Shown piece after piece: positions 1,348 through 63,851 of a stretch of 63,949 nt of DNA. Position numbers and translations under genes: made by a program. Positions within the stretch are counted from its first letter, which is position 1; every line of letters starts with the position of its first letter. Origin of the DNA: Phyllobates terribilis (taxonomy: Eukaryota); assembly GCF_046119375.1 (NCBI RefSeq), contig NW_027362772.1, positions 91,450,001 to 91,513,949 of the forward strand, written 5' to 3'. Under the pieces are notes generated by a model, which worked only from the letters and a program-made list of their open reading frames with translations, was not told where the DNA came from and searched no databases.

Positions 1348-1398
1348 ATGGAAGAAGATGAAGTCGCGGATAGCTGGGAGGAAGCGGCCGACAGCGGG
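1348..1398 (+). CDS. SZRD1: SZRD1 coding exon 1
   Basis: [17 protein letters not shown], donor GTGAGC at 1399, phase 0. Confidence 0.96.
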
Positions 1399-4300
1399 GT
1401 GAGCGGAGGCGGGGAGCGGGCGGAGGCTGTGAGACCGCGGAGTGCGCCGGGAGGAGGGCGGGCCTTGTGTGCGCGGGTGGAGCGGAGCACGCCGGCATCA
1501 CTGCTCCCTGCGGACCGGCGCCCTGCTCTGTGTGCTGCTGTCCTGAGGCCGCACAGCATCCGGGGTCACCGGAGCCCCTGCGGACCAGAGCCCCGGGACG
1601 TGTCCGCCCCTGCGGGTGTGACTGTCACCAGGAGCCCTGAGCGCACAGGGCAGCCATGACTATGGCCAGCAGAGGGTCCGAGACCTGAGAGGAGAGCGCC
1701 CCCCGCAGGAACTGGACTAGTGAACGTGTGCACCACAGACCCCCCTGGTGTCCGCCTGCCCTCTTTTTTTTTCTCTCCCCCGCCCGGTGTCTGCGGTGCC
1801 GCCCGCCTGCCCTCTTTCCTCCCCCCCTCCTGTGGCCGCCCGCCTGCCCTCTTTCCTCCCCCCCTCCTGTGGCCGCCCGCCTGCCCTAACCTCCCCCCCC
1901 CCCCCCCCTGGTGTCCGCCTGCCCTCTTTTTTTCTCTCCCCCGCCCGGTGTCTGCGGTGCCGCCCACCTGCCCTCTCCCCCCCCCCCCCCTCCTGTGGCC
2001 GCCCGCCTGCCCTCTTTCCTCCCCCCCTCCTGTGGCCGCCCGCCTGCCCTAACCCCCCCCCCCCCGGTGTCCGCCTGCCCTCTTTCCTCCCCACTCCTGT
2101 GGCCGCCCGCCTGCCCTCTTTCCTCCCCCCTCCTGTGGCCGCCTGCCCTCTTTTTTTCTCTCCCCCGCCCGGTGTCTGCGGTGCCGCCTGCCTGCCCTAA
2201 CCCCTCCACCCCCCCCCCCCCCCCTGGTGTCCGCCTGCCCTCTTTTTTTCTCTCCCCCGCCCGGTGTCTGCGGTGCTGCCCGCCTGCCCTCTTTCCTCCC
2301 CCCCCCCCCCCCCCCCCCCCTTCCCCGGTGGCTGCCCGCCTGCCCTCCTTTTTTTTTTTTTTTTCCCCCCGGGGGCCACACACATGCCCTCCCTCCGTTA
2401 CTCCCTTTGTTTTCTGTGGGTGAGGAGTTTGCAGCATGTCGCCCGGTTTGGGGTGTGCAGCCCTTCGTATCTGCAGGCTCCGGGTGATGGCGGCTATTTA
2501 TAGTGCGCCCCCTGTAGGAGCGGCCGCAGATATTTATACCTCTATGTATCTGTCACTTTATTTGGCAGAGGAGTCGCACTGAAGTCCTGAGCTGCAGCCA
2601 AGTCATGTGACCTGACACCCGAGGGTCGGCGCTGCTACCAGGGGGGGGCGCTCACCAGCCGATGCTGGGAGTTGTAGTCTAGCTTAACCCCTTCCTGATG
2701 TGTGTGGTGCTGAGGTCGCTCCGTACACAGTTGTGCCGGCTGTATAGCTGCAGCTGAACCTCTTTGTTGCCACGGCCATTAGTGACTGCAACATCCTAAG
2801 GTTTATATACAACAGGAGGCACTGAGATTCCTATAGGTCGTCGTGGCAGCTGCGGACCCTCAGCCGGCTCCTGTGATCGCAGGTTCCTGGGTGGGTGTAA
2901 TAATAGGCAGAAATTCACTACAGATCGACCACTTTAATATAAGATATCCCTGAGCAAGGAAAGCGGCTGCGCTCCAGAAAGTCAGATGTGTGAGACTTGT
3001 ACACTGAAACGCAGACTCTGCTCACAGCAGCATTTATCTCTTCCAGGAAATAGATCGACGGTTAGAGAAGAAGCTGCGGATAACAGAAAGGGAGAGGTAA
3101 GAGCCGAGCGTGACTGCACCAGCAGAATAGTGAGTGCAGCTCTGGAGTATAATACAGGATGTAACTCAGGATCAGTAATGTAATGTATGTACACAGTGAC
3201 TGCACCAGCAGAATAGTGAGTGCAGCTCTGGAGTATAATACAGGAGGTAACTCAGGATCAGTAATGTAATGTATGTACACAGTGACTGCACCAGCAGAAT
3301 AGTGAGTGCAGCTCTGGAGTATAATACAGGAGGTAACTCAGGGTCAGTAATGTAATGTATGTACACAGTGACTGCACCAGCAGAATAGTGAGTGCAGCTC
3401 TGGAGTATAATACAGGATGTAACTCAGGATCAGTAATGTAATGTATGTACACAGTGACTGCACCAGCAGAATAGTGAGTGCAGCTCTGGAGTATAATACC
3501 GGATGTAACTCAGGATCAGTAATGTAATGTATGTACACAGTGACTGCACCAGCAGAATAGTGAGTGCAGCTCTGGAGTATAATACAGGATGTAACTCAGG
3601 ATCAGTAATGTAATGTATGTACACAGTGACTGCACCAGCAGAATAGTGAGTGCAGCTCTGGAGTATAATACAAGAGGTAACTCAGGATCAGTAATGTAAT
3701 GTATGTACACAGTGACTGCACCAGCAGAATAGTGAGTGCAGCTCTGGAGTATAATACAGGATGTAACTCAGGATCAGTAATGTAATGTATGTACACAGTG
3801 ACTGCACCAGCAGAATAGTGAGTGCAGCTCTGGGGTATAATACAGGACGTAACTCAGGATCAGTAATGTAATGTATGTACACAGTGACTGCACCAGCAGA
3901 ATAGTGAGTGCAGCTCTGGAGTATAATACAGGATGTAACTCAGGATCAGTAATGTAATGTATGTACACAGTGACTGCATCTGCAGAATAGTGAGTGCAGC
4001 TCTGGAGTATAATACAGGAGGTAACTCAGGATCAGTAATGTAATGTATGTACACAGTGACTGCATCTGCAGAATAGTGAGTGCAGCTCTGGAGTATAATA
4101 CAGGATGTAACTTATTGGAATCAGTGTCTTTCACTCAATAGTGCTCCTCTGTCTGCTCCTCCTGGCAGCCAGTTTGATCAGTGTTGGGTCAGGCTTCTAA
4201 TGAAGTGCTGTTTTCTCCTCCAGTCTCCCTTGTCGTTGTGCTGTCAGTCGGCGGTGCCAATCCTTCATTTGTGACTTTCCTGGTTTTTATATTCTTTCTT

Positions 4301-4835
4301 TCTTCAGCAGGAAATCTAAGTCTCCTCAGAAAGCTCCGGTGGTTATTCAGGACGACTCTCTCCCGGCGGGCCCTCCTCCGCAAATCAGGATCCTTAAGAG
4401 GCCTACAAGCAACGGATTGTCCGGTAACCCTAATGCCAGCAGCCGGCCGGCCGTCCCTTTGAAGACCTTGGCTCAGAGGGAGGCGGAGTACGCAGAGGCC
4501 AGGAAACGTATCCTCGGCAGCGCCAGTCCGGAGGAGGAGCCGGAGAAGCCTATAGTGGACCGGTGAGTGGTTCCGAGGCAGCGCTGCCGCCATTCATGGC
4601 CTCTGCAGGGCCCTATGGCTATTACAGGGGCCCCGAAGATCGTCAGCCTCTCTGGCTGCCTCGGTGGTGGATGTGGCTCCTCACTGATGGTACAATGGAC
4701 GCCGCGCTGACGCTCACTCTCTTGTCTTTCAGGCCTATCCGGATCAACCAGTCGGAGGACAGCAGACCTTCCAATGATGTGATCCGGCAGCCGCTGGGTC
4801 CCGACGGTTCACAGGGTTTCAAACAGCGCAGATAG
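1348..4835 (+). CDS. SZRD1: SUZ RNA-binding domain-containing protein 1; join(1348-1398,3047-3096,4308-4562,4733-4835), 152 aa
   Basis: Spliced translation [38 protein letters not shown]...[20 protein letters not shown]...[18 protein letters not shown]...[16 protein letters not shown] matches vertebrate SZRD1; 459 nt, GT-AG introns. Confidence 0.97.
1741..2390. repeat. C-rich complex minisatellite in SZRD1 intron 1
   Basis: Recurring GGCCGCCCGCCTGCCCTCTTT and CCCGGTGTCTGCGGTGCCG units with variable poly-C/poly-T runs; G-tracts on the minus strand. Confidence 0.9.
3047..3096 (+). CDS. SZRD1: SZRD1 coding exon 2
   Basis: TTCCAG acceptor, [16 protein letters not shown], donor GTAAGA at 3097. 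Confidence 0.96.
3110..4111. repeat. 86-bp tandem repeat, about 11.6 copies, SZRD1 intron 2
   Basis: Unit GTGACTGCACCAGCAGAATAGTGAGTGCAGCTCTGGAGTATAATACAGGATGTAACTCAGGATCAGTAATGTAATGTATGTACACA; starts at 3110, 3196 ... 4056. Confidence 0.98.
4308..4562 (+). CDS. SZRD1: SZRD1 coding exon 3 (SUZ domain); tandem acceptor at 4308 or 4311
   Basis: TTCAGCAG acceptor, [16 protein letters not shown]...EKPIVDR, donor GTGAGT at 4563. Confidence 0.96.
4733..4835 (+). CDS. SZRD1: SZRD1 coding exon 4 (SUZ-C motif, stop)
   Basis: CTTTCAG acceptor, [33 protein letters not shown]. Confidence 0.96.
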
Positions 4836-5565: not shown

Positions 5566-5768
5566 GGGTGCGGTGCTGCCGCAGACACCCGGAGGCGGTG
5601 GACGGTGGGTGCGGTGCTGCAGCAGACACCCGGAGGCGGTGGACGGTGGGTGCGGTGCTGCAGCAGACACCCGGAGGCGGTGGACGGTGGGTGCGGTGCT
5701 GCAGCAGACACCCGGAGGCGGTGGACGGTGGGTGCGGTGCTGCAGCAGACACCCGGAGGCGGTGGACG
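5566..5768. repeat. 41-bp tandem repeat x5 in putative SZRD1 3' UTR
   Basis: Unit GGGTGCGGTGCTGCAGCAGACACCCGGAGGCGGTGGACGGT at 5566, 5607, 5648, 5689, 5730. Confidence 0.95.
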
Positions 5769-7888: not shown

Positions 7889-7980
7889 ATGGCGGACGGC
7901 GAATACGAGTCGGTGTTGTGTGTGAAGCCGGAAGTTCACGTTTACCGGATTCCTCCCCGATCGTCCAACCGGGGCTACAG
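7889..7980 (+). CDS. NECAP2: NECAP2 exon 1
   Basis: [31 protein letters not shown], donor GTGAGT at 7981. Confidence 0.96.
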
Positions 7981-10900
7981 GTGAGTGCGGGGCGGGGACT
8001 CCGGGGAGGAGCCGCTGTTACCGGGTAACCCGTGTCCTCTCCACAGAGCGGCGGAATGGCAGCTGGACCAACCGGCCTGGAGCGGCCGCCTCCGCATCAC
8101 CGCCCGGGGGAAGATGGCGTACATCAAGCTGGAGGACCGGAGCTCCGGTGAGGAGGGGAAACCGGGGAGCGTAATAACGGGACAGGAGCCTAATAACGGG
8201 ATGATGAGGGAAGAGGAGCCCGACAGCAAACGGCAGGGGGAGAGGAGCAGGATAACGAGGGGAGAGGAGCGGGATAACGAGGGGAGAGGAGCAGGATAGC
8301 GGGATAACGAGGGGAGAGGAGCAGGATGGTGAGGGGAGAGGAGCAGGATAGCGGGATAACGAGGGGAGAGGAGCAGGATAGCAGGATGGTGAGGGGAGAG
8401 GAGCAGGATAGCGGGATAACGAGGGGAGAGGAGCAGGATAGTGGGATGGTGAGGGGAGAGGAGCAGGATAGTGGGATAACGAGGGGAGAGGAGCGCGACG
8501 GCGGGATAACGAGGGGAGAGGAGCAGGATAGTGGGATAACGAGGGGAGAGGAGCAGGATAGTGGGATGGTGAGGGGAGAGGAGCAGGATAGCGGGATAAC
8601 GAGGGGAGAGGAGCAGGATAGCAGGATGGTGAGGGGAGAGGAGCAGGATAGCAGGATGGTGAGGGGAGAGGAGCAGGATAGCGGGATAACGAGGGGAGAG
8701 GAGCAGGATAGTGGGATGGTGAGGGGAGAGGAGCAGGATAGTGGGATAACGAGGGGAGAGGAGCAGGATAGCAGGATGGTGAGGGGAGAGGAGCAGGATA
8801 GTGGGATAACGAGGGGAGAGGAGCAGGATAGTGGGATGGTGAGGGGAGAGGAGCAGGATAGCGGGATAACGAGGGGAGAGGAGCAGGATAGCAGGATGGT
8901 GAGGGGAGAGGAGCAGGATAGCAGGATGGTGAGGGGAGAGGAGCAGGATAGTGGGATAACGAGGGGAGAGGAGCAGGATAGTGGGATGGTGAGGGGAGAG
9001 GAGCAGGATAGTGGGATGGTGAGGGGAGAGGAGCAGGATAGTGGGATGGTGAGGGGAGAGGAGCAGGATAGCGGGATAACGAGGGGAGAGGAGCGCGACA
9101 GCGGGATATCGAGGGGAGAGGAGCAGGATAGCAGGATGGTGAGGGGAGAGGAGCAGGATAGCAGGATGGTGAGGGGAGAGGAGCAGGATAGCAGGATGGT
9201 GAGGGGAGAGGAGCAGGATAGCAGGATGGTGAGGGGAGAGGAGCAGGATAGCAGGATGGTGAGGGGAGAGGAGCAGGATAGCGGGATGGTGAGGGGAGAG
9301 GAGCAGGATAGCGGGATGGTGAGGGGAGAGGAGCAGGATAGTGGGATGGTGAGGGGAGAGGAGCGCGACGGCGGGATAACGAGGGGAGAGGAGCGCGACA
9401 GCGGGATAACGAGGGGAGAGGAGCAGGATAGCGGGATAACGAGGGGAGAGGAGCAGGATAGCAGGATGGTGAGGGGAGAGGAGCAGGATAGCGGGATAAC
9501 GAGGGGAGAGGAGCAGGATAGTGGGATGGTGAGGGGAGAGGAGCAGGATAGTGGGATAACGAGGGGAGAGGAGCAGGATAGTGGGATGGTGAGGGGAGAG
9601 GAGCAGGATAGTGGGATGGTGAGGGGAGAGGAGCAGGATAGTGGGATGGTGAGGGGAGAGGAGCAGGATAGCGGGATAACGAGGGGAGAGGAGCGCGACA
9701 GCGGGATATCGAGGGGAGAGGAGCAGGATAGCAGGATGGTGAGGGGAGAGGAGCAGGATAGCAGGATGGTGAGGGGAGAGGAGCAGGATAGCAGGATGGT
9801 GAGGGGAGAGGAGCAGGATAGCAGGATGGTGAGGGGAGAGGAGCAGGATAGCAGGATGGTGAGGGGAGAGGAGCAGGATAGCAGGATGGTGAGGGGAGAG
9901 GAGCAGGATAGCGGGATGGTGAGGGGAGAGGAGCAGGATAGTGGGATGGTGAGGGGAGAGGAGCGCGACGGCGGGATAACGAGGGGAGAGGAGCAGGATA
10001 GCGTGATGGTGAGGGGAGAGGAGCGCAACAGCGGGATAACGAGGGGAGAGGAGCAGGATAAGCGGGATGGTGAGGGGAGAGGAGCGCGGCAGCGGGATAA
10101 CGAGGGGAGTGGAGCGCGACGGCGGGATAACGAGGGGAGAGGAGCAGGATAGTGGGATAACGAGGGGAGAGGAGCAGGATAGCAGGATGGTGAGGGGAGA
10201 GGAGCGCGACGGCGGGATAACGAGGGGAGAGGAGCGCGACGGCGGGATAACGAGGGGAGAGGAGCGCGACGGCGGGATAACGAGGGGAGAGGAGCGCGAC
10301 GGCGGGATAACGAGGGGAGAGGAGCGCGACGGCGGGATAACGAGGGGAGAGGAGCGCGACGGCGGGATAACGAGGGGAGAGGAGCAGGATAGCAGGATGG
10401 TGGGATGGTGAGGGGAGAGGAGCAGGATAGTGGGATAACGAGGGGAGAGGAGCGTAATAACGGGATAATGAGGGAAGAGGAGCAGGACGGCAGGGGGAGA
10501 GGAGCAGGATAGCAGGATGGTGAGGGGAGAGGAGCAGGATAGCGGGATAACGAGGGGAGAGGAGCGCGACAGCGGGATAACGAGGGGAGAGGAGCAGGAT
10601 AGCAGGATGGTGAGGGGAGAGGAGCAGGATAGTGGGATGGTGAGGGGAGAGGAGCAGGATAGTGGGATGGTGAGGGGAGAGGAGCAGGATAGCGGGATAA
10701 CGAGGGGAGAGGAGCGCGACAGCGGGATATCGAGGGGAGAGGAGCAGGATAGCAGGATGGTGAGGGGAGAGGAGCAGGATAGTGGGATAACGAGGGGAGA
10801 GGAGGAGGATAGCAGGATAACGAGGGGAGAGGAGCGCGACGGCGGGATAACGAGGGGAGAGGAGCGCGACGGCGGGATAACGAGGGGAGAGGAGCAGGAT

Positions 10901-27886: not shown

Positions 27887-28195
27887 CTCCAGTCACCTCC
27901 GGAGCTGCGCTCACCTCACGTCTCCTCCTCCAGTCACCTCCGGAGCTGCGCTCACCTCACGTCTCCTCCTCCAGTCACCTCCGGAGCTGCGCTCACCTCA
28001 CGTCTCCTCCTCCAGTCACCTCCGGAGCTGCGCTCACCTCACGTCTCCTCCTCCAGTCACCTCCGGAGCTGCGCTCACCTCACGTCTCCTCCTTCAGTCA
28101 CCTCCGGAGCTGCGCTCACCTCACGTCTCCTCCTTCAGTCACCTCCGGAGCTGCGCTCACCTCACGTCTCCTACTCCAGTCACAGCCAGAGCTGC
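27887..28195. repeat. 41-bp tandem repeat, about 7.5 copies, downstream of the NECAP2 stop (putative 3' UTR)
   Basis: Unit CTCCAGTCACCTCCGGAGCTGCGCTCACCTCACGTCTCCTC at 27887, 27928, 27969 ... 28174. Confidence 0.96.
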
Positions 28196-31713: not shown

Positions 31714-32549
31714 CCAGACGCTTCCAAAATAAATCCCTGCAAGTGATGGAGCAATGCTGGGGGCCTCTGCCGCTGGGGCCGCGCTTCATGTGTCCTGTCA
31801 GAGGTGGGCAAAGCATTGGTGCAGCCGCAGGGCGGCCCCGGGGTCAGGGGCCACATCCATTGCCAGGCTGCACTATGAGCTACCGGCAGTGCGGAGCCCC
31901 TCTCCTGTCCGGCCCCCATGTATCTGCTTTACGGCCCGGTCCGCTGGGGCGACCAGAGGATGATCCTCCTGTCCAGGGGCACTGCAGACCCCTCATGGCC
32001 TTCGCTGCCCCCTGGATCTCACATTTACCCGACGCCCGTTCTGCCGTCTCTATCACCACCATAGACCCCAGTGCTGCTGAGACTTCTGGTTCTCCGTGTT
32101 GGTCTGCAGCGGTTCTCTCTAGGCTGCAGGTGACGGGCGCGGGCCGCGGCGCTGGATTTTGGAGCTTTTCATTCTGTGCCAGGGCTAATAGAAAGGTGGC
32201 GGGAGGACGACGTCTGCGGGGGTGAAGGGAAACCGTCAGCAGGCAGGCGCAGCGAGCTGTGGTGTGCGGCCTCTTCCACGTGGAGTTCTGATCCCCAGAG
32301 ATCAAGTGCAGGAGCCGTATGCAAATCAGGCAGGAGGTGCACTGGGGGCGGGCCCTTCTGATAATTTGTGAGTGCACTGCCCGCCCCCAGTGCACCTCCT
32401 GCCTGCTGACGGTTTCCCTGTGATGAGGAGCCTGGGCCTCGTTCACACTGCAGGACATGATATCCTGAGGGTGGCCGGGGCCAACGGTTACGGTGTGTTG
32501 CGTGCGACACTGGAGAAAACCGCCGGCCCCAGTGTCCCAGTCCTCCGGC

Positions 32550-32641
32550 ATCTGATAATCCGGAGCATCTGATAATCCGGAGCATCTGGTAATCCGGAGC
32601 ATCTGATAATCCGGAGCATCTGATAATCCGGAGCATCTGAT
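32550..32641. repeat. 17-bp tandem repeat, about 5.4 copies
   Basis: ATCTGATAATCCGGAGC units. Confidence 0.95.
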
Positions 32642-33231: not shown

Positions 33232-33270
33232 ATGAACGCAGCGGAGCAGACGCTGGAGGCGGTGATACAG
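33232..33270 (+). CDS. CROCC: CROCC coding exon 1
   Basis: MNAAEQTLEAVIQ resembles mammalian ELTLETVIQ; upstream in-frame TAA at 33172; weak donor GTCGGC. Confidence 0.8.
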
Positions 33271-57200: not shown

Positions 57201-60200
57201 CTTCTAGCTCCATCCCCGTGTTATCTGGGTGCGCGTACCCGGCCGCCATCACTGCTCTCATCACTGCTTCCCCTTCGCTGGACTGACTGAATGCCGGACG
57301 AGCACCGGAGCTCCGCTGGACGGACTGAATGCCGGACGAGCACCGGAGCTCCGCTGGACGGACTGAATGCCGGACGAGCACCGGAGCTCCGCTGGACGGA
57401 CTGAATGCCGGACGAGCACCGGAGCTCCGCTGGACGGACTGAATGCCGGACGAGCACCGGAGCTCCGCTGGACGGACTGAATGCCTGACGAGCACCGGAG
57501 CTCCGCTGGACGGACTGAATGCCGGACGAGCAGCGGAGCTCCGCTGGACGGACTGAATGCCGGACGAGCACCGGAGCTCCGCTGGACGGACTGAATGCCG
57601 GACGAGCACCGGAGCTCCGCTGGACGGACTGAATGCCGGACGAGCACCGGAGCTCCGCTGGACGGACTGAATGCCGGACGAGCACCGGAGCTCCGCTGGA
57701 CGGACTGAATGCCGGACGAGCAGCGGAGCTCCGCTGGACGGACTGAATGCCGGACGAGCAGCGGAGCTCCGCTGGACGGACTGAATGCCGGACGAGCAGC
57801 GGAGCTCCGCTGGACGGACTGAATGCCGGACGAGCAGCGGAGCTCCGCTGGACGGACTGAATGCCGGACGAGCAGCGGAGCTCCGCTGGACGGACTGAAT
57901 GCCGGACGAGCAGCGGAGCTCCGCTGGACGGACTGAATGCCGGACGAGCAGCGGAGCTCCGCTGGACGGACTGAATGCCGGACGAGCAGCGGAGCTCCGC
58001 TGGACGGACTGAATGCCGGACGAGCAGCGGAGCTCCGCTGGACGGACTGAATGCCGGACGAGCAGCGGAGCTCCGCTGGACGGACTGAATGCCGGACGAG
58101 CAGCGGAGCTCCGCTGGACGGACTGAATGCCGGACGAGCAGCGGAGCTCCGCTGGACGGACTGAATGCCGGACGAGCAGCGGAGCTCCGCTGGACGGACT
58201 GAATGCCGGACGAGCAGCGGAGCTCCGCTGGACGGACTGAATGCCGGACGAGCAGCGGAGCTCCGCTGGACTGATGGATCCTGATCGCTGTCTGTCCCCG
58301 CAGGTCAGAGAAGGAGGCGCTGGAGACGACCCTGTACGACATCCAGCAGCAGCTCGTCCACATCACCAACCGCAAGGAGCAGCTGGAGGGAGAGACACAG
58401 GGTCTGCGGCTGGCGAAGGAGGCGTTACAGGGTGAGAGAGGGCAGTATATACAGGGCACCCGGCCCCCCAGGTGGGTGCACCCCAGATAATCTCTCCATC
58501 GCCTTGTTCCCGCTCCTATAGTGGAGGTCAGCTCCGCGCGGAGGCTGATGGAGGCCGAGATCGCTAAGCTGGAGCGCGACAAGGAGGCCGTGAACCAGAA
58601 ACTGATCTGCATGGAGGAGGAAGCGAAGATCACCCTGAAGAGCAAAGAGAAGGCGCATGAAGAGGACGTGGAGCGGCTGCTGCAGGAGAAGGTGGGTGTG
58701 CAGCCGTGACTTGTGGAACTACAGGTCCCGGCAGGCTGTGGTGCTCGTGGGCATCTGTACGTAGTGAGTGGACGGTTCTGTGTTGCAGGACGCCGTCCGT
58801 CTGGAGCTGCAGTTAGAGAAGGAAGAGTTGCTCCGCCGGCTGACGCAGGAGCGCGAGGAGCTGCTGGCGCGATACGAGATGGAGCGTGAGGAGCTGAGCG
58901 AGGAGATCGCGGCGCTGCAGCAGGAGCGCGACGACGGCTTGTTACAGGCGGAGAGCGAGAAGCAGCAGGTGAGGATGAGGGGGCGTCCGGGGCTCCGGGC
59001 CGACATCATGGCACCTTACCGTCTCCTCCTCCTCATCTCCTCCTCCTCATCTCCTCCTCCTCATCTCCTCCTCCTCATCTCCTCCTCCTCATCTCCTCCT
59101 CCTCCTCCTCCTCCTCCTCCTCCTCCTCCTCCTCCTCCTCCTCCTCCTCCTCCACCGTCTCCTCACCGTCTCCTCCTCCTCCTCCTCACCGTCTCCTCCT
59201 CCTCACCGTCTCCTCCTCCTCACCGTCTCCTCCTCCTCACCGTCTCCTCCTCCTCCTCCTCACCGTCTCCTCCTCCTCACCGTCTCCTCCTCCTCACCGT
59301 CTCCTCCTCCTCACCGTCTCCTCCTCCTCACCGTCTCCTCCTCCTCACCGTCTCCTCCTCCTCACCGTCTCCTCCTCCTCACCGTCTCCTCCTCCTCACC
59401 GTCTCCTCCTCCTCACCGTCTCCTCCTCCTCACCGTCTCCTCCTCCTCACCGTCTCCTCCTCCTCACGTCTCCTCTTTCTCATCCTCATCCTCCTCCTCA
59501 TCCTCCTCCTCCTCATCCTCCTCCTCATCCTCTCCTCATCCTCTCCTCATCCTCTCCTCACCGTCTCCTCACCGTCTCCTCATCCTCCTCCTCACCGTCT
59601 CCTCATCCTCCTCCTCACCGTCTCCTCATCCTCCTCCTCACCGTCTCCTCATCCTCTCCTCCTCCTCCTCATCCTCTCCTCCTCCTCCTTATCCTCTCCT
59701 CCTCCTCCTTATCCTCTCCTCCTCCTCCTTATCCTCTCCTCCTCCTCCTTATCCTCTCCTCCTCCTCCTTATCCTCTCCTCATCCTCTCCTCCGTCTCCT
59801 CCTCCTCATCCTCTCCTCCTCCTCATCCTCTCCTCCTCCTCATCCTCTCCTCCTCCTCACCGTCTCCTCCTCACCGTCTCCTCCTCCTCACCGTCTCCTC
59901 CTCCTCACCGTCTCCTCCTCCTCACCGTCTCCTCCTCCTCACCGTCTCCTCCTCCCTCACCGTCTCCTCCTCCTCACCGTCTCCTCCTCCTCTCCTCCTC
60001 CGTCTCCTCATCCTCNNNNNNNNNNNNNNNNNNNNNNNNNNNNNNNNNNNNNNNNNNNNNNNNNNNNNNNNNNNNNNNNNNNNNNNNNNNNNNNNNNNNN
60101 NNNNNNNNNNNNNNNNNNNNNNNNNNNNNNNNNNNNNNNNNNNNNNNNNNNNTCCTCCTCATCCTCTCCTCATCCTCCTCCTCATCCTCCTCCTCATCCT

Positions 60201-63200
60201 CTCCTCATCCTCCTCCTCATCCTCTCCTCATCCTCTCCTCATCCTCTCCTCATCCTCTCCTCATCCTCTCCTCATCCTCTCCTCATCCTCTCCTCATCCT
60301 CTCCTCATCCTCTCCTCATCCTCTCCTCATCCTCTCCTCATCCTCTCCTCTCACCGTCTCCTCATCCTCCTCCTCACCCTCCTCATCCTCCCACCGTCTC
60401 CTCATCCTCCTCCTCACCGTCTCCTCATCCTCTCCTCCTCCTCCTCATCCTCTCCTCCTCCTCCTTATCCTCTCCTCCTCCTCTCCTCCTCATCCTCTCC
60501 TCCTCATCCTCTCCTCCCTCCTCTCCTCATCCTCTCCTCCGTCTCCTCATCCTCCTCCTCCTCCTCACCTCCTCTTCCTCCTCACCTCCTCCTCCTCCTC
60601 CGTCTCCTCCTCACCACCTCCTCCTCCTCACCTCCTCCTCCCTCCGTCTCCTCCTCATCCTCCTCTTCCTCCTCTTCCTCATCCTCCTCNNNNNNNNNNN
60701 NNNNNNNNNNNNNNNNNNNNNNNNNNNNNNNNNNNNNNNNNNNNNNNNNNNNNNNNNNNNNNNNNNNNNNNNNNNNNNNNNNNNNNNNNNNNNNNNNNNN
60801 NNNNNNNNNNNNNNNNNNNNNNNNNNNNNNNNNNNNNNNNNCTCATCCTCTCCCATCCTCCTCATCCTCTCCTCATCCTCCTCATCCTCCTCATCCTCTC
60901 CTCATCCTCCTCATCCTCTCCTCATCCTCCTCATCCTCCTCATCCTCTCCTCATCCTCTCCTCATCCTCTCCTCATCCTCTCCTCATCCTCCTCCTCACC
61001 CTCCTCCTCACCGTCTCCTCATCCTCCTCCTCACCGTCTCCTCATCCTCCTCCTCACCGTCTCCTCATCCTCCTCCTCACTCCTCTCCTCCTCCTCCTCC
61101 TCACCGTCTCCTCATCCTCTNNNNNNNNNNNNNNNNNNNNNNNNNNNNNNNNNNNNNNNNNNNNNNNNNNNNNNNNNNNNNNNNNNNNNNNNNNNNNNNN
61201 NNNNNNNNNNNNNNNNNNNNNNNNNNNNNNNNNNNNNNNNNNNNNNNNNNNNNNATCCTCTCCTCATCCTCTCCTCCTCATCCTCTCCTCCTCCTCCTCA
61301 TCCTCTCCTCCTCCTCTCATCCTCCTCCTCCTCCTCCGTCTCCTCATCCTCCTCCTCACCTCCTCCTCCTCCTCACCTCCTNNNNNNNNNNNNNNNNNNN
61401 NNNNNNNNNNNNNNNNNNNNNNNNNNNNNNNNNNNNNNNNNNNNNNNNNNNNNNNNNNNNNNNNNNNNNNNNNNNNNNNNNNNNNNNNNNNNNNNNNNNN
61501 NNNNNNNNNNNNNNNNNNNNNNNNNNNNNNNNNNNNNNNNNNNNNNNNNNNNNNNNNNNNNNNNNNNNNNNNNNNNNNNNNNNNNNNNNNNNNNNNNNNN
61601 NNNNNNNNNNNNNNNNNNNTCATCCTCTCCTCATCCTCTCCTCATCCTCTCCTCATCCTCTCCTCATCCTCTCCTCATCCTCTCCTCATCCTCTCCCTCA
61701 TCCTCTCCTCATCCTCTCCCTCACCGTCTCCTCCTCCTCCTCCTCACCGTCTCCTCATCCTCCTCCTCTCCTCCTTATCCTCTCCTCCTCCTCCTTATCC
61801 TCTCCTCCTCCTCCTTATCCCTCCTCCTCCTCCTTATCCTCCTCCTCCCTTATCCTCTCCTCCCTCTCCTCTCCTCATCCTCTCCTCCTCCTCCTCCTCC
61901 TCCCCTCCTCCTCCTCCTCCTCCTCCTCCTCCTCCTCCTCCTCCGTCTCCTCATCCTCCTCCTCACCGTCTCCTCATCCTCCTCCTCACCTCTCCTCATC
62001 CTCCTCCTCACCGTCTCCTCATCCTCCTCCTCACCGTCTCCTCATCCTCCTCCTCACCGTCTCCTCATCCTCCTCACTCATCCTCTCCTCATCCTCTCCT
62101 CCTCCTCCTCATCCTCTCCTCCTCCTCCACCCCTCATCCTCTCCTCCTCCCTCCTTCCCTCCCTCCTCCGTCTCCTCATCCTCCTCACCTCATCCCTCCT
62201 CCTCATNNNNNNNNNNNNNNNNNNNNNNNNNNNNNNNNNNNNNNNNNNNNNNNNNNNNNNNNNNNNNNNNNNNNNNNNNNNNNNNNNNNNNNNNNNNNNN
62301 NNNNNNNNNNNNNNNNNNNNNNNNNNNNNNNNNNNNNNNNNNNNNNNNNNNNNNNNNNNNNCCGTCTCCTCATCCTCCTCTTCCTCTTTCTCATCTCCTC
62401 CTCATCCTCTTCCTCATCCTTCTCCTCCTCATCCTCCTCCTCCTCTCCTCATCCTCCTCTCCTCATCCTCCTCTCCTCATCCCTCCTCCTCCTCATCCTC
62501 TCCTCATCCTCCTCTCCTCCCACCGTCTCCTCATCCTCCTCCTCACCGTCTCCTCATCCTCCTCCTCACCGTCTCCTCATCCTCCTCCTCACCGTCTCCT
62601 CATCCTCCTCCTCTCCTCCTCCTCCTTATCCTCTCCTCCTCATCCTCATCCTCTCCTCCTCCTCCTCATTATCCTCTCCTCCTCCTCCTTATCCTCTCCT
62701 CCTCCTCCTTATCCTCCCTCCTCCTCCTTATCCTCTCCTCCTTATCCTCTCCTCCTTATCCTNNNNNNNNNNNNNNNNNNNNNNNNNNNNNNNNNNNNNN
62801 NNNNNNNNNNNNNNNNNNNNNNNNNNNNNNNNNNNNNNNNNNNNNNNNNNNNNNNNNNNNNNNNNNNNNNNNNNNNNNNNNNNNNNNNNNNNNNNNNNNN
62901 NNNNNNNNNNNNNNNNNNNNNNNNNNNNNNNNNNNNNNNNNNNNNNNNNNNNNNNNNNNNNNNNNNNNNNNNNNNNNNNNNNNNNNNNNNNNNNNNNNNN
63001 NNNNNNNNNNNNNNNNNNNNNNNNNNNNNNNNNNNNNNNNNNNNNNNNNNNNNNNNNNNNNNNNNNNNNNNNNNNNNNNNNNNNNNNNNNNNNNNNNNNN
63101 NNNNNNNNNNNNNNNCTCACCGTCTCCTCATCCTCCTCCTCACCGTCTCCTCATCCTCCTCCTCACCGTCTCCTCATCCTCCTCCTCACCGTCTCCTCAT

Positions 63201-63851
63201 CCTCCTCCTCACCGTCTCCTCATCCTCCTCCTCACCGTCTCCTCATCCTCCTCCTCACCGTCTCCTCATCCTCCTCCTCACCGTCTCCTCATCCTCCTCC
63301 TCACCGTCTCCTCATCCTCCTCCTCACCGTCTCCTCATCCTCCTCCTCATCCTCCTCCTCACCGTCTCCTCATCCTCNNNNNNNNNNNNNNNNNNNNNNN
63401 NNNNNNNNNNNNNNNNNNNNNNNNNNNNNNNNNNNNNNNNNNNNNNNNNNNNNNNNNNNNNNNNNNNNNNNNNNNNNNNNNNNNNNNNNNNNNNNNNNNN
63501 NNNNNNNNNNNNNNNNNNNNNNNNNNNNNNNNNNNNNNNNNNNNNNNNNNNNNNNNNNNNNNNNNNNNNNNNNNNNNNNNNNNNNNNNNNNNNNNNNNNN
63601 NNNNNNNNNNNNNNNNNNNNNNNNNNNNNNNNNNNNNNNNNNNNNNNNNNNNNNNNNNNNNNNNNNNNNNNNNNNNNNNNNNNNNNNNNNNNNNNNNNNN
63701 NNNNNNNNNNNNNNNNNNNNTATCACTGAAGGAATCAGAAAAAGCTTCTCTGAGTGAGAAACTCGGCAGCGCTCACAGCACAATGGCCGCCCTGACCCTG
63801 GAGATGGAGCGACACAAGCGGGAGAGTCAGGGGAGGCACGAGCAGGAGCGG
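33232..63851 (+). CDS. CROCC: Rootletin (ciliary rootlet coiled-coil), 5' partial: 22 coding exons in window, about 1117 codons, continues downstream
   Basis: Hallmarks TLEAVIQ, IREIVTRNLS, LSLQEENRLLQQELSRVEDLLAQSRAERDELAIKYNA, SFNAYFSNEHSRLLSLWRQVVGFRR, EELSEEIAALQQERDDGLLQAESEKQQ; all traced junctions GT-AG and in phase. Confidence 0.97.
33371..33512 (+). CDS. CROCC: CROCC exon 2
   Basis: ALSAHV...LPARIREIVTRNLSPPPGA, donor GTGAGG at 33513. Confidence 0.92.
33520..34846. repeat. C-rich minisatellite of about 40 bp at the start of CROCC intron 2
   Basis: CCCCCTGTACCTCTATACACCCCCCGACCCGAGCCC(T/G)GTG units with variable C runs. Confidence 0.96.
34847..39200. repeat. Pyrimidine-rich 28-30-bp minisatellite, about 150 copies, CROCC intron 2
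   Basis: CTCTTGTTCCTCTGTCACTC(A/G)CCCCCCC units. Confidence 0.99.
39355..39373 (+). promoter_or_regulatory. ZNF143/THAP11-type ACTACA-SBS motif
   Basis: ACTACAACTCCCAGCATGC; reverse copy at 2662-2678 and a variant at 58718-58736. Confidence 0.45.
39586..39734 (+). CDS. CROCC: CROCC exon 3
   Basis: LAADMSSLLSLQEENRLLQQELSRVEDLLAQSRAERDELAIKYNAISER, donor GTAATA. Confidence 0.95.
39740..44598. repeat. AT-rich 45-bp minisatellite, about 108 copies, CROCC intron 3
   Basis: TATAACCTGGGCATCTCCTGTATATAATTATATATGTACAGCTGG units. Confidence 0.99.
44804..45934. repeat. 34-36-bp tandem repeat, about 32 copies, derived from the Tc1 transposase 3' end
   Basis: CAGCTTTCTCTGCAGTCTTTTGGGGTCTGTCTCTC; minus strand reads ETDPKRLQ, like ETYPKRL of Tc1 transposases. 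Confidence 0.93.
46744..46940. repeat. 40-bp tandem repeat x5 inside the Tc1 relic
   Basis: TTTATCCCTGACCTGTCTGGTG(T/G)GCTCCTTAGTTTTCAGC at 46744, 46784, 46824, 46864, 46904. Confidence 0.95.
47447..47460. promoter_or_regulatory. Candidate RFX X-box in CROCC intron 3
   Basis: GTCTCCATGGTGAC fits RYYNYY-WW-RRNRAC exactly. Confidence 0.5.
47590..47955. repeat. Degenerate GC-rich repeat of about 29 bp
   Basis: Recurring TAGCGGGGCCCCGGGGGTCTGCC(A/C)G(A/T)GT(G/C). Confidence 0.7.
48083..48274 (+). CDS. CROCC: CROCC exon 4
   Basis: LEQNLRLETGE...YKRKLQAYQEGQQRQAQLVQKLQAK, donor GTGAGC. Confidence 0.96.
48364..48447 (+). CDS. CROCC: CROCC exon 5
   Basis: VLQYKKRCGEVEQQLLERSTELEQERLS, donor GTGAGT. 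Confidence 0.95.
48753..50008. repeat. 33-bp minisatellite, about 38 copies, CROCC intron 5
   Basis: CCCACACAAAGCGGCACAATAACACCCGCGCCG units. Confidence 0.98.
50068..50165 (+). CDS. CROCC: CROCC exon 6
   Basis: SRLEVTDSRLRQEEESSNELENALIRLEEEQQR, donor GTACGG. Confidence 0.9.
50365..50530 (+). CDS. CROCC: CROCC exon 7
   Basis: SASLTQVNVMLREQLDQANSANQALSEDLRK...WRREEE. Confidence 0.95.
50615..50721 (+). CDS. CROCC: CROCC exon 8
   Basis: SFNAYFSNEHSRLLSLWRQVVGFRRHFSEMKTMTER. Confidence 0.96.
50792..51013 (+). CDS. CROCC: CROCC exon 9
   Basis: DLSAMQKGLSQ...LRLAENS...EKAELSAR. Confidence 0.92.
51092..51176 (+). CDS. CROCC: CROCC exon 10
   Basis: AAEMNKTIERLQVDSRDKELTIRQLQEQ; phase-consistent. 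Confidence 0.88.
52543..52647 (+). CDS. CROCC: CROCC exon 11
   Basis: EMSRVDERVTLVGEEVEALRCERETLQETLRELTQ. Confidence 0.88.
52907..53155 (+). CDS. CROCC: CROCC exon 12
   Basis: AVLSDADSGLQLS...SPRRSLSPAFRDSALSAVHSALQRRQLQIQ. Confidence 0.95.
53505..53704 (+). CDS. CROCC: CROCC exon 13
   Basis: ELRGRLEGGQEAAGTLRRQLSDSENDRRVLEQK... Confidence 0.94.
53831..54013 (+). CDS. CROCC: CROCC exon 14
   Basis: DRTALERSVHNLQEQLETQRQEAEKLQ...QREVDRG. Confidence 0.92.
54160..54304 (+). CDS. CROCC: CROCC exon 15
   Basis: HKSQEQLEVKLSALRKELVVVKEVL...ITQALSK. Confidence 0.93.
54690..55410 (+). mobile_element. Truncated Tc1-like transposase relic in CROCC intron 15
   Basis: ATG at 54774: MGRCRHCSEEQRTVIKKLIGEGKTYKEVQ...GRKRKTT...NILWTDERKIVLFGS with stops and frameshifts; breaks off before the second Asp. 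Confidence 0.85.
55515..55661 (+). CDS. CROCC: CROCC exon 16
   Basis: AEIHRAELELAL...DALSKMSALNESLAQDKTELNKVIAQ. Confidence 0.96.
55668..56350. repeat. 30-43-bp minisatellite filling CROCC intron 16
   Basis: GAGGCCGCGGGACCCCCACACCTCAGCCCCTCGTGGCAGTG units with internal duplicated blocks. Confidence 0.95.
56397..56627 (+). CDS. CROCC: CROCC exon 17
   Basis: LEQQRSSLQGQKHEVEQE...RANVQEQLGQ. Confidence 0.94.
56681..56948. repeat. 47-bp tandem repeat, about 6 copies, CROCC intron 17
   Basis: GCAGAGCATTGTGGGTC(G/A)TCTTGG(C/T)CCCCGGGATTGGAC(G/A)GGT(GGG/AGT)T units. Confidence 0.93.
56992..57185 (+). CDS. CROCC: CROCC exon 18
   Basis: LSRQRNVLSEDLVQSRRE...REKEALMKEKGGLVVQLTACERE... Confidence 0.94.
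57285..58271. repeat. 38-bp minisatellite x26, CROCC intron 18
   Basis: GACTGAATGCCGGACGAGCA(C/G)CGGAGCTCCGCTGGACG units. Confidence 0.98.
58304..58431 (+). CDS. CROCC: CROCC exon 19
   Basis: SEKEALETTLYDIQQQL...LAKEALQ. Confidence 0.94.
58522..58691 (+). CDS. CROCC: CROCC exon 20
   Basis: EVSSARRLME...DKEAVNQKL...AHEEDVERLLQEK. Confidence 0.94.
58789..58968 (+). CDS. CROCC: CROCC exon 21
   Basis: DAVRLELQLEKEE...EELSEEIAALQQERDDGLLQAESEKQQ. Confidence 0.96.
59015..63720. repeat. (TCC)n-based cryptic microsatellite interrupted by seven N-runs, CROCC intron 21
   Basis: TCC, CATCC and CACCGTCTCC motifs; N at 60016-60152, 60690-60841, 61121-61254, 61382-61619, 62207-62361, 62763-63115, 63378-63720. 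Confidence 0.95.
63721..63851 (+). CDS. CROCC: CROCC exon 22 (acceptor and about the first 4 nt hidden by N)
   Basis: (L)SLKESEKASLSEKLGSAHSTMAALTLEMERHKRESQGRHEQER, donor GTAAGT at 63852. Confidence 0.93.

What the first reader, a model, noticed from the sequence alone, without database searches (positions are those of the whole stretch)
1348..63851. Locus-wide minisatellite seeding: a different, locally derived array in almost every enlarged intron
At least 15 unrelated units (17, 29, 30, 33, 35, 38, 40, 41, 41, 45, 47, 59, 86 bp and others) occupy this window. Many start at or near a donor: SZRD1 i2 13 nt after, NECAP2 i2 about 10 nt, CROCC i2, i3 and i16 almost immediately, i17 and i21 about 50 nt. 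Others end just before an acceptor (CROCC i5 about 60 nt, i18 about 32 nt). Repeat-free introns are mostly 66-260 nt, so the genes are compact and were inflated intron by intron. Seeds are visible in flanking sequence in several cases. Many units have palindromic cores (TATATAATTATATA, CAGCGGAGCTCCGCTG, CTCCGGAG, TCCGGA, GGGGCCCC). Inference: an active regional process, such as slippage or recombination in a GC-rich, possibly subtelomeric domain, perhaps tied to transcription or splicing, turns local sequence into arrays.
Basis: partly seen in the sequence, partly recalled or inferred. Interest (0 to 1): 0.72.

Follow-up and report, generated by a model that had tools for sequence, protein, structure and literature searches.

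The report
Intron-filling minisatellites in frog genes
Three neighbouring genes of the golden poison frog have had their short introns swollen by about twenty different tandem repeats; this is real, but it is a local example of repeat growth already described for GC-rich regions near frog chromosome ends.

Summary
Tandem Repeats Finder gives 21 array blocks with at least 20 unit families, covering 60% of the window: 75% of intron bases, 24% of intergenic bases, no coding base. SZRD1, NECAP2 and CROCC lie on the + strand. Seventeen of 19 array-free introns are 66-476 nt; the other two are enlarged by transposons.

- **Locus-specific arrays:** three CROCC arrays (introns 16-18) are locus-specific by contig evidence. 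Orthologous introns in other frogs are short and array-free.
- **Not de novo local seeds:** at least five arrays. Three lie inside Tc1-like transposons. The 86-bp SZRD1 intron-2 unit is 85-98% identical to repeats in that intron in four other hyloid frogs, and a 41-bp array is its diverged relative.
- **Splice sites:** array starts within 15 nt of a donor are modestly over-represented (4 seen, about 1 expected, post-hoc P about 0.01). Acceptor proximity is at chance.
- **Palindromes:** only 2 of 23 units exceed chance.
- **Position:** orthologous loci lie 6-25 Mb from chromosome ends, matching the recombination-driven subtelomeric expansion described for frogs.

The scan has already reported this array type at many other loci of this genome, so the process is not specific to this locus.

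The parts
1348..4835 (+). SZRD1 coding span: exons 1348-1398, 3047-3096, 4308-4562, 4733-4835
   Evidence: Pfam SUZ. The named Phyllobates terribilis SZRD1 is the top protein hit. Splice sites read.
1740..2316 (.). C-rich 37/163-bp array in SZRD1 intron 1, starting 341 nt after the donor
   Evidence: TRF. Degenerate copy in the right flank, z 3.5.
3110..4112 (+). 86-bp x 11.7 array in SZRD1 intron 2, starting 13 nt after the donor; member of a family conserved in this intron across hyloid frogs
   Evidence: TRF. 85-98% identical repeats in SZRD1 intron 2 of L002-L005.
5566..5768 (.). 41-bp x 5 array downstream of the SZRD1 stop codon (3'UTR or intergenic, not an intron)
   Evidence: TRF; exon map.
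7889..27047 (+). NECAP2 coding span: exons 7889-7980, 8047-8147, 25436-25540, 25615-25696, 26037-26145, 26622-26754, 26830-26917, 27005-27047
   Evidence: Pfam DUF1681/PHear on four exons. Exons conserved in L002 and L005. Splice sites read.
8206..22439 (+). 30-bp purine-rich array of about 470 copies in NECAP2 intron 2, with a degenerate 5' edge and a 31/52/82-bp variant tail at 22080-22439
   Evidence: TRF. Left-flank z 8.3. Internal 98-100% identical blocks of about 2 kb at offset 5721. Absent from Engystomops intron 2.
22655..24451 (+). Tc1/mariner-like element with perfect 28-nt terminal inverted repeats, carrying the 59-bp x 6 array at 23664-24020
   Evidence: Inverted repeats. Weak, sub-threshold Pfam HTH_Tnp_Tc3_2 match on 22788-23309 (28.5 bits, below the 31.5-bit cut-off). 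TRF.
25842..25998 (.). 34-bp x 4.8 array in NECAP2 intron 4, ending 38 nt before the acceptor
   Evidence: TRF.
27887..28195 (-). 41-bp x 7.5 array downstream of the NECAP2 stop codon; diverged reverse-orientation relative of the 86-bp family
   Evidence: Unit-pair z 7.5. Alignment with single copies in L003 and L005.
29740..31717 (.). G-rich 31-bp array (187-bp higher-order period, about 60 copies) between NECAP2 and CROCC
   Evidence: TRF.
32548..32641 (.). 17-bp x 5.5 array upstream of CROCC exon 1
   Evidence: TRF.
33232..63851 (+). CROCC exons 1-22: 33232-33270, 33371-33512, 39586-39734, 48083-48274, 48364-48447, 50068-50165, 50365-50530, 50615-50721, 50792-51013, 51092-51176, 52543-52647, 52907-53155, 53505-53704, 53831-54013, 54160-54304, 55515-55661, 56397-56627, 56992-57185, 58304-58431, 58522-58691, 58789-58968, and exon 22 ending at 63851 with its start hidden in an N run
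   Evidence: tblastn with rootletin P0007. Weak Pfam Rootletin match (28.2 bits, cut-off 36). Splice sites and phases read.
33527..34848 (.). C-rich 41/43-bp array in CROCC intron 2, starting 14 nt after the donor
   Evidence: TRF.
34847..39210 (.). 28-bp x 156 pyrimidine-rich array abutting the 41-bp array in CROCC intron 2, with a 22-bp tail
   Evidence: TRF. 95% self-identity at all offsets.
39746..44600 (.). 45-bp x 108 AT-rich array in CROCC intron 3, starting 11 nt after the donor; the unit holds a 14-nt palindrome
   Evidence: TRF; palindrome P 0.0035.
44601..47222 (-). Tc1/mariner-like element inserted at the 3' edge of the 45-bp array; carries the 35-bp x 32 array (44814-45932) and the 40-bp x 5 array (46743-46941)
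   Evidence: Inverted arms 44743-44772 / 47112-47141. Minus-strand ORF 46066-46335 is 63% identical to the Tc1 fragment at 99-314. Sequence read.
47223..47270 (+). Degenerate single copy of the 45-bp unit, to the right of the transposon
   Evidence: About 75% identity to array units.
47600..47950 (.). Related 21-bp and 29-bp arrays near the 3' end of CROCC intron 3
   Evidence: TRF; unit-pair z 11.9.
48752..50009 (.). 33-bp x 38 array in CROCC intron 5, ending 58 nt before the acceptor; a 31-bp x 1.9 duplication lies at 48625-48684
   Evidence: TRF; acceptor read.
51700..52495 (.). High-copy dispersed repeat that enlarges CROCC intron 10 (1366 nt) without any array
   Evidence: Many contigs pile up here and summed word depth is 6e3-4e4, against about 7 on exons.
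54486..55480 (+). Tc1-like transposon remnant that enlarges CROCC intron 15 (1210 nt)
   Evidence: Transposase-like frames. Up to 92 contigs per site and depth 1e3-1e5 in three DNA samples.
55665..56351 (+). 32/45-bp array (246-bp higher-order period) filling CROCC intron 16, from 4-6 nt after the exon to 45 nt before the acceptor; units repeat the donor-adjacent motif
   Evidence: TRF. Units printed. Junction contigs in three samples and locus-level depth. Orthologous intron is 213 nt and array-free.
56661..56950 (.). 47-bp x 6.2 array (141-bp higher-order period) in CROCC intron 17
   Evidence: TRF. A contig of sample S2 skips 141 bp. Orthologous intron is 86 nt.
57276..58271 (.). 38-bp x 26 array in CROCC intron 18, ending 32 nt before the acceptor; the unit holds a 16-nt palindrome
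   Evidence: TRF. Palindrome P 0.002. Locus-level depth on its first ten copies.
59023..63720 (.). CT-rich 11/17/23-bp arrays in CROCC intron 21, starting 54 nt after the donor and broken by seven N runs; true length unknown
   Evidence: TRF; N runs listed; exon ends read.

Best explanation
The window is a GC-rich, gene-dense stretch of a Phyllobates terribilis chromosome, probably in the extended subtelomeric part. Introns that were originally about 70-500 nt, and the intergenic spacers, have been inflated by some twenty independent minisatellites.

Most arrays began as a tandem duplication of whatever sequence lay there. That could be plain intron sequence (in CROCC i16 starting at the donor-adjacent bases) or the inside of a resident Tc1-like transposon. 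They then grew by unequal exchange or replication slippage, which is common in recombination-rich, GC-rich frog chromosome ends. A minority come from an older or mobile repeat family: the 86-bp unit and its 41-bp relative.

Selection keeps the 5' splice site (about 6 nt) and the branch-point, pyrimidine-tract and acceptor region (about 30-60 nt) intact. Arrays in short introns therefore end up next to the donor and a few tens of bases from the acceptor. The arrays are tolerated by-products, not devices.

Shown here: the arrays, their positions, the nesting inside transposons, their absence from orthologous introns, and the large internal duplications. Inferred: recombination as the driver and the subtelomeric position in this species.
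For: - **Arrays:** present and confined to non-coding DNA.
- **Intron sizes:** array-free introns have a median of 97 nt. Array-bearing introns leave 51-389 nt once the array is removed in 8 of 11 cases.
- **Lineage-specific growth:** NECAP2 i2 is 650 nt and array-free in Engystomops. CROCC i16/i17 are 213/86 nt and array-free in contig L006.
- **Locus-specific units:** on the i16, i17 and i18 arrays the contig word depth is 4-37 where contigs were laid (some bins in X5/X8 had none), like the exons at about 7. Transposon segments in the same stretch reach 1e3-1e5 with tens of contigs per site. Exon-array junction contigs occur in three samples.
- **Local origin:** i16 units repeat the donor-adjacent motif. 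A degenerate 45-bp unit lies beyond the transposon in i3. NECAP2 i2 has degenerate copies at its 5' edge.
- **Unequal exchange:** blocks of about 2 kb are 98-100% identical at offset 5721 inside an array that is 89% identical overall. Higher-order periods of 141, 187 and 246 bp occur. Sample S2 has a contig 141 bp shorter in i17.
- **Domain:** unique sequence is 54.8% GC against 42% for a draft assembly (PMC12208295). Orthologous loci lie 6.4, 10.5, 14.4 and 25.3 Mb from chromosome ends and are themselves 23-48% tandem arrays.
- **Literature:** PMC10794172 links frog extended subtelomeres, satellites, high recombination and GC, and reports transposon-derived minisatellites there.
Against: - The chromosomal position and recombination rate of this locus in P. 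terribilis itself could not be obtained.
- Array lengths are unverified. Only short-read contigs were available, and one array is broken by N runs.
- Copy number elsewhere in the genome was tested for only three arrays. The tool itself warns that contig depth is a coarse measure.
- The 86-bp family is better conserved across species than the coding exons, which simple local slippage does not explain.
- Donor-proximal starts occur in introns with long residual sequence (208, 389 and 520-1824 nt), where 'short intron plus selection' does not fully account for them.
- The 141-bp difference in sample S2 could be a k-mer collapse and not a real allele.
Confidence: 0.7

Rival explanations
1. Most arrays were brought in from elsewhere as parts of mobile elements or dispersed satellite families, and were not made from local sequence.
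For: - Three arrays lie inside Tc1-like elements bounded by inverted repeats.
- The 86-bp unit is 85-98% identical to repeats in four other hyloid species and occurs in both orientations.
- Its 41-bp relative sits at a second place in the window, and single diverged copies occur in L003 and L005.
- Earlier scan notes describe transposon-derived minisatellites in this genome.
Against: - The i16-i18 arrays show locus-level contig depth while true dispersed repeats in the same stretch reach 1e3-1e5.
- No other unit matches anything else in the window or in about 140 kb of orthologous frog DNA.
- i16 units copy the local donor-adjacent sequence.
- Arrays inside transposons may have expanded after insertion. 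The Tc1-like remnants at 99-608 and 54486-55480 carry no arrays.
Confidence: 0.12
2. A transcription- or splicing-coupled mutational process seeds arrays preferentially just downstream of 5' splice sites.
For: - Four of 15 array blocks start within 15 nt of the donor against about 1.0 expected under uniform placement (P about 0.01). A KS test against uniform gives P 0.044.
- Three of the four are in introns with more than 200 nt of residual sequence.
- Earlier scan notes list many donor-adjacent arrays elsewhere in this genome.
Against: - The threshold was chosen after seeing the data, and n is small.
- One of the four is the old 86-bp family.
- Acceptor proximity is at chance (P 0.25).
- Arrays also occur in intergenic DNA and inside transposons.
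- Strand composition is inconsistent: purine-rich in NECAP2 i2, pyrimidine-rich in CROCC i2 and i21.
- The earlier notes were gathered by readers who look at exon borders, so they are biased.
Confidence: 0.1
3. The arrays, or their sizes, are assembly artefacts.
For: - Seven N runs lie inside the CT-rich array.
- Perfectly identical 1.2-kb blocks inside the 14-kb array could be mis-joined long reads.
- Source-sample contigs break inside arrays.
Against: - Exon-to-array junctions are reproduced without mismatches in contigs of three samples from two studies.
- Orthologous loci in four independently assembled frog genomes are also 23-48% tandem arrays.
Confidence: 0.05
4. The arrays are selected regulatory devices, for example protein-binding platforms or splicing modulators.
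For: - The conserved 86-bp family in SZRD1 intron 2 across hyloids.
Against: - Nearly all arrays are lineage-specific and absent from orthologous introns.
- The units are unrelated to each other.
- No Rfam family matches.
- No RNA data were available.
Confidence: 0.03

Closest known systems
[quoted passage not shown] 2024, PMC10794172)
   Same: - Many different tandem arrays in GC-rich DNA within tens of Mb of chromosome ends.
- Some arrays derive from pieces of transposons.
- Different expansions occur in different frog lineages.
- Unequal crossing-over is the proposed driver.
   Different: - That work is genome-scale and centred on Xenopus tropicalis. It does not describe intron-by-intron inflation of compact genes or positions relative to splice sites.
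- Recombination rate and chromosome position are not known for this locus in P. terribilis.
- Enrichment of the TGGG/AGGG/ACAG tetramers is only partly seen here.
GC-rich VNTRs with units over 15 bp, enriched 21-fold in human subtelomeres and often intronic (Linthorst et al. 2020, PMC7608644)
   Same: - Unit sizes and GC richness.
- Intronic location, with several arrays per gene.
- Length variation between haplotypes.
   Different: - The density here is far higher, at 75% of intron bases.
- Polymorphism is only hinted at, by one 141-bp difference.
Transposon-derived minisatellites, such as the 52-bp SINE/tRNA-V tail repeat in Xenopus (PMC10794172) and internal arrays of DNA transposons
   Same: The 35-, 40- and 59-bp arrays lie inside Tc1-like elements. 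The 86/41-bp family occurs at several places and in several species.
   Different: Most arrays in the window show no link to a mobile element, and three are demonstrably locus-specific.
Splice-donor minisatellites of human genes such as F7, IFI6 and CBS (from my own knowledge, and named in earlier scan notes)
   Same: The CROCC i16 array starts at the donor and repeats a donor-like GGTGAG motif five more times.
   Different: The unit does not include exon sequence or the true GTAGGT donor. The other arrays start 11-341 nt into the intron and do not copy the donor.
Satellite-filled giant introns of Drosophila Y-linked fertility genes (from my own knowledge)
   Same: Introns consisting almost entirely of tandem repeats inside functional genes.
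   Different: Those introns are hundreds of kb to Mb of simple satellites in heterochromatin. Here the largest is 17 kb, with minisatellite units in GC-rich euchromatin.

Membership tests
Minisatellite / VNTR | Head-to-tail copies of a 10-100 bp unit, several to hundreds of copies | tested here: met
   TRF: periods 17-86 bp, 2.7-468 copies, 70-99% matches.
Minisatellite / VNTR | Copy number varies between individuals | tested here: inconclusive
   One contig of sample S2 is 141 bp (3 units) shorter in CROCC i17. This could be a k-mer collapse. No long reads were available.
Frog extended-subtelomere tandem-repeat domain (PMC10794172) | Lies within the terminal tens of Mb of a chromosome | tested here: inconclusive
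   Orthologous loci lie 6.4-25.3 Mb from an end in Dendropsophus, Engystomops, E. coqui and Leptodactylus. Coordinates in P. terribilis were not obtainable.
Frog extended-subtelomere tandem-repeat domain (PMC10794172) | Elevated GC content | tested here: met
   Unique sequence is 54.8% GC and arrays 60.4%, against 42.3% for the draft assembly (PMC12208295).
Frog extended-subtelomere tandem-repeat domain (PMC10794172) | High meiotic recombination rate | not testable with these tools
   No linkage map or population data were available.
Frog extended-subtelomere tandem-repeat domain (PMC10794172) | Tandem repeats enriched in TGGG, AGGG and ACAG | tested here: inconclusive
   AGGG and ACAG are about 2x the composition expectation in array bases, TGGG is not. 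20 of 27 units hold at least one, about what chance gives.
Transposon-borne or dispersed satellite family | The array lies inside an element bounded by terminal inverted repeats | tested here: met
   Met for 3 arrays only: 59-bp and 35-bp and 40-bp. No inverted repeats were found around the arrays at 1740, 3110 or 27887.
Transposon-borne or dispersed satellite family | The same unit occurs at many unlinked loci (high copy number) | tested here: not met
   Not met for CROCC i16, i17 and i18: locus-level depth against 1e3-1e5 on true dispersed repeats. Partly met for the 86/41-bp family. Not tested for the other arrays.
Splice-donor minisatellite (F7 type) | The unit contains the exon end and the functional donor | tested here: not met
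   No array overlaps an exon. The i16 units carry only a donor-like GGTGAG that starts at intron position +4.

The most novel reading that the evidence does not exclude
In this frog, minisatellite seeding is truly biased to the first 15 or so nucleotides downstream of 5' splice sites across the genome. This would reflect a mutational process coupled to transcription or spliceosome assembly, and would not be only an effect of short introns and selection. In the same repeat-prone domain, the near-invariant 86-97-bp repeat in SZRD1 intron 2 of hyloid frogs would be a constrained element.
Probability: 0.1. Interest if true: 0.7.

Novelty: new member of a known kind. Interest (0 to 1): 0.3.

Why it matters
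The locus shows clearly how compact vertebrate genes can be inflated several-fold by tandem repeats without touching exons or splice signals. It also shows that the same process acts on plain intron DNA and on resident transposons alike. It gives concrete minimal distances that arrays keep from splice sites: 6-14 nt at donors and 32-58 nt at acceptors.

If the donor-side excess held genome-wide, it would point to a splice-site-linked mutational bias. The SZRD1 intron-2 repeat, conserved better than the coding exons across five frog families, is the one item here that current explanations do not cover.

Tried and rejected
- **RNA evidence for the exon map and array splicing:** no RNA run holds the stretch. 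The small libraries X9-X20 carry adapters and an unspliced exon14-intron14-exon15 contig, so they look like capture DNA.
- **Read laying on 53100-59000:** I laid 51700-57650 instead. The 3' junction of the i18 array and all other arrays therefore remain untested.
- **A script holding typed peptide strings:** I redid exon location by coordinates only.
- **Orthologous DNA:**
  - The closest relative, Ranitomeya imitator, has no DNA on hand because its file is too large.
  - P0007, P0038, P0067 and P0081 are not on record.
  - Frog CROCC proteins were not reached by the word search seeded with a marsupial rootletin.
- **Earlier-findings look-ups by sequence or relatives:** blank.
- **Pfam on short transposase pieces:** no hit. 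I used BLASTP against the window's own Tc1 fragment instead. PHROGs was irrelevant.
- **Rfam on the whole window:** no family.
- **Single-copy 'seeds' in orthologous introns of NECAP2 i2 and CROCC i16/i17:** nothing aligns beyond the splice sites.
- **Palindromic cores as a general property:** rejected.
- **Tetramer enrichment as a unit-level property:** rejected.
- **Higher-order structure by megablast self-comparison of the 14-kb array:** the search failed. Ungapped offset comparison worked.

Full report
**Scope and rules followed**

I worked only from the window, from loci and proteins returned by the tools, and from papers.
- I did not fill or look up any N run.
- I fetched no human contig.
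- I never joined exons into a spliced model for a search. Exons were searched one at a time by reference, and continuity was checked by splice-site phase arithmetic only.
I repeated that step with coordinates.

**The arrays are real**

Tandem Repeats Finder reports 99 rows, which collapse to 21 array blocks holding at least 20 unit families. They cover 38.7 kb, or 60% of the window. By compartment this is 75% of intron bases, 24% of intergenic bases and no coding base.

The largest arrays are:

| Unit | Copies | Location |
|---|---|---|
| 30 bp | about 470 | 8206-22439 |
| 28 bp | 156 | 34847-39210 |
| 45 bp | 108 | 39746-44600 |
| 31 bp | about 60 | 29740-31717 |
| 33 bp | 38 | 48752-50009 |
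| 35 bp | 32 | 44814-45932 |
| 41 bp | about 30 | 33527-34848 |
| 38 bp | 26 | 57276-58271 |
| 86 bp | 11.7 | 3110-4112 |
| CT-rich, mixed | not known | 59023-63720, broken by N runs |

In an all-against-all comparison of 20 units, only 4 of 190 pairs are related. Three are neighbouring variants of one array. The fourth links the 86-bp unit to the 41-bp unit at 27887.

**Genes and introns**

All three genes are on the + strand.
- Pfam finds SUZ in SZRD1 and the NECAP PHear domain in four NECAP2 exons. It gives a weak Rootletin match in CROCC.
- The best protein match to the SZRD1 exon is named Phyllobates terribilis SZRD1 and lies on a 324-Mb record.
- A rootletin from the representative search (P0007) mapped 14 CROCC segments by tblastn.
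- I placed the remaining exons and all splice sites by reading three-frame views.

Every junction has GT..AG and a compatible phase. CROCC exon 22 starts inside the N run 63378-63720.

Nineteen introns carry no array. Seventeen are 66-476 nt (median over all 19 is 97). The other two, CROCC i10 (1366 nt) and i15 (1210 nt), are enlarged by dispersed repeats. Eleven measurable introns carry arrays, and CROCC i21 is a twelfth that cannot be measured because of the gaps. Once the arrays are removed, eight of the eleven leave only 51-389 nt.

However, four arrays lie outside any coding-exon intron, and CROCC i3 and i2 each hold several arrays.

**Distance to splice sites**

I treated each array as an insertion into the array-free intron and placed it uniformly at random.

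| Measure | Seen | Expected | P |
|---|---|---|---|
| Blocks starting within 15 nt of the donor (of 15) | 4 | 1.0 | about 0.01 |
| Blocks within 60 nt of the acceptor | 5 | 3.7 | 0.25 |
| KS test of relative positions against uniform | n/a | n/a | 0.044 |

The donor result is the same when the donor and acceptor signal regions are excluded from the null. The donor excess is suggestive only:
- the threshold was set after seeing the data;
- n is small;
- one of the four arrays is the old 86-bp family;
- three blocks are positioned by transposon insertions.

No array comes closer than 6 nt to a donor or 32 nt to an acceptor. That fits the footprints of the 5' splice site and of the branch point, pyrimidine tract and acceptor. 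In introns that were originally 50-120 nt, any 30-47-bp duplication must start close to the donor.

**Local or imported?**

Only Logan contigs were available, and no RNA. On 51700-57650, two segments serve as positive controls for dispersed repeats: 51700-52495, and the Tc1 remnant at 54486-55480. Tens of contigs per site at 90-99% likeness pile up there, and summed word depth reaches 1e3-1e5 in three DNA samples.

Exons and unique intron sequence sit at about 7. The arrays of CROCC i16, i17 and i18 sit at 4-37 where contigs were laid (some bins in X5 and X8 had none). The tool warns that contig depth is coarse, but the contrast is three to four orders of magnitude. These three units are therefore locus-specific.

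Contigs from samples S1, S2 and S3 run from exon 16 straight into the array with at most one mismatch (none in S1 and S2). S1 contigs also bridge array-exon 17-array and array-exon 18-array. These arrays are therefore not assembly inventions. Supporting local origin:
- the i16 units repeat the bases that follow the true donor, adding five donor-like GGTGAG motifs;
- NECAP2 i2 has degenerate copies at its 5' edge.

At least five arrays, however, are not simple local seeds.
- **59-bp array.** It lies inside a Tc1-like element with perfect 28-nt terminal inverted repeats, at 22655-24451.
- **35-bp and 40-bp arrays.** They lie inside a second, minus-strand Tc1-like element at about 44601-47222. 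Its inverted arms are and its sequence. Its ORF at 46066-46335 is 63% identical to the Tc1 fragment at 99-314. This element inserted at the 3' edge of the 45-bp array, and a degenerate unit lies to its right. Whether these internal arrays grew before or after insertion is not known.
- **86-bp unit of SZRD1 i2.** See the next section.
- **41-bp array at 27887-28195.** It is a diverged, reverse-oriented relative of the 86-bp family.

**Orthologous loci**

I fetched the SZRD1 loci of Nanorana (L001), Engystomops (L002), Dendropsophus (L003), Eleutherodactylus coqui (L004) and Leptodactylus fuscus (L005).
- **Position.** In the four chromosome-scale hyloids the locus lies 10.5, 6.4, 14.4 and 25.3 Mb from a chromosome end.
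- **Repeat content.** These loci are 23-48% tandem arrays, mostly with species-specific units.
- **NECAP2 i2.** It is 650 nt and array-free in Engystomops.
- **CROCC i16 and i17.** A 1-kb genomic contig of another frog (L006) holds CROCC exons 16-18, with introns of 213 and 86 nt and no array.
- **Precursors.** Nothing beyond the splice sites aligns, so no single-copy precursor could be recognised.

None of the window's units matches these loci except the 86-bp unit. That unit is 85-98% identical to 81-100-bp repeats in SZRD1 intron 2 of all four hyloids. The repeats start 8-184 nt from the exon-2 donor and occur in both orientations.

Coding exons between the same species are only 80-87% identical, and unique intron sequence does not align. 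The family is absent from Nanorana. Diverged single copies lie downstream of SZRD1 in L003 and L005.

This array is therefore old or mobile, not a new local seed. Its conservation is unexplained.

**Mechanism**

- Inside the 14-kb NECAP2 array, which is 89% identical overall, the segment 14400-16400 matches 20121-22121 at 98-100%. The match is perfect for 1.2 kb.
- A 0.6-kb piece recurs at offset -4008, and 13000-13800 recurs at offset 5549.
- Higher-order periods of 141, 187 and 246 bp occur in other arrays.
- A contig of sample S2 joins 56740 to 56882 and so skips one 141-bp higher-order unit of the i17 array. This is either a shorter allele or a k-mer collapse.

These are the expected marks of unequal exchange, with slippage likely for the first duplications. 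Unique sequence in the window is 54.8% GC, against 42.3% for a draft assembly of the species (PMC12208295).

**Minor claims**

- **Palindromes.** The five listed cores exist, but only two units exceed shuffled controls. The combined test is not significant.
- **Flanking seeds.** Significant beyond the TRF borders in only two arrays.
- **Subtelomeric tetramers.** The tetramers reported for Xenopus are enriched about 2-fold for AGGG and ACAG in array bases, but not at the level of units.
- **Strand composition.** It shows no consistent relation to the direction of transcription.

**Comparison with what is known**

Bredeson et al. (PMC10794172) describe terminal regions of about 20-30 Mb on frog chromosomes that are rich in satellites, GC and recombination. 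Some minisatellites there derive from transposons, and different frogs show different expansions. They propose unequal crossing-over as the cause.

Human subtelomeres show a 21-fold enrichment of GC-rich VNTRs with units over 15 bp, often inside genes (PMC7608644).

Earlier notes of this scan report the same kind of intronic and donor-adjacent minisatellite at many other loci of this genome. These include MRTO4 and EMC1 about 4.75 Mb away on the same record, as well as transposon-derived arrays and an old, positionally conserved array.

The finding is thus a dense, well-resolved example of a known kind, not a locus-specific process.

**Limits**

- No RNA data.
- No long reads.
- No genome-wide copy counts.
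- No coordinates or recombination data for this species.
- Copy number was tested for only three arrays.
- The CROCC i21 array length is unknown because of the gaps.

Noticed in passing
window 3110-4112; L002 13396-14766 and 19623-20827; L003 14019-14117 and 14907-15185; L004 15688-16387; L005 13783-14006: An 81-100-bp repeat in SZRD1 intron 2 is 85-98% identical across five hyloid frog families. That is better conserved than the coding exons (80-87%), while the surrounding intron does not align. Orientation and offset from the donor differ between species. It could be a mobile family with a conserved master copy or a constrained element; this is unresolved.
   Followed up: partly
L002 8197-9701; L003 5438-8138 and 9616-9688; L004 3704-5861 and 8113-9703; L005 1-5731: A conserved 35/36-bp AT-rich repeat forms kb-scale arrays upstream of SZRD1 in all four hyloid loci. 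This is a second array family that keeps both its position and its sequence. The window starts too close to SZRD1 to show whether P. terribilis has it.
   Followed up: no
L002 15035-18145: In Engystomops, SZRD1 intron 2 contains a diverged partial duplicate of exon 3, exon 4 and the 3'UTR. Copies of the 86-bp-family repeat block flank it, which points to a segmental duplication of about 6 kb.
   Followed up: no
window 44601-47222: A minus-strand Tc1-like transposon inserted into the edge of the 45-bp array, and itself carries two internal tandem arrays (35 bp x 32 and 40 bp x 5). From my recollection of Tc1 sequences (not tested here), the 40-bp unit appears to come from the start of the transposase coding region.
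   Followed up: partly
window 55665-56351: Each unit of the CROCC intron-16 array holds an acceptor-like CCTCAG, and five units hold a donor-like GGTGAG. The intron is therefore full of cryptic splice-site pairs.
   Followed up: no
window 14400-16400 vs 20121-22121: Blocks of about 2 kb are 98-100% identical inside a 14-kb array that is otherwise about 89% identical. This is either a recent unequal exchange or a long-read mis-join.
   Followed up: partly
window 56740-56882: A contig from an independent individual (sample S2) lacks 141 bp, which is three 47-bp units, of the CROCC intron-17 array. This may be a length polymorphism.
   Followed up: no
window 1348-4835: SZRD1 spans 3.5 kb in P. 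terribilis, against 5.3-11.5 kb in six other frogs. This is despite P. terribilis having the largest genome of them, estimated at 12.6 Gb in PMC12208295.
   Followed up: no
window 51700-52495: CROCC intron 10 is enlarged by a very high-copy dispersed repeat of unknown class, with no tandem array.
   Followed up: no
window 4305-4311: SZRD1 exon 3 has a tandem CAGCAG acceptor, so two in-frame acceptors 3 nt apart are possible, differing by one Ser codon.
   Followed up: no
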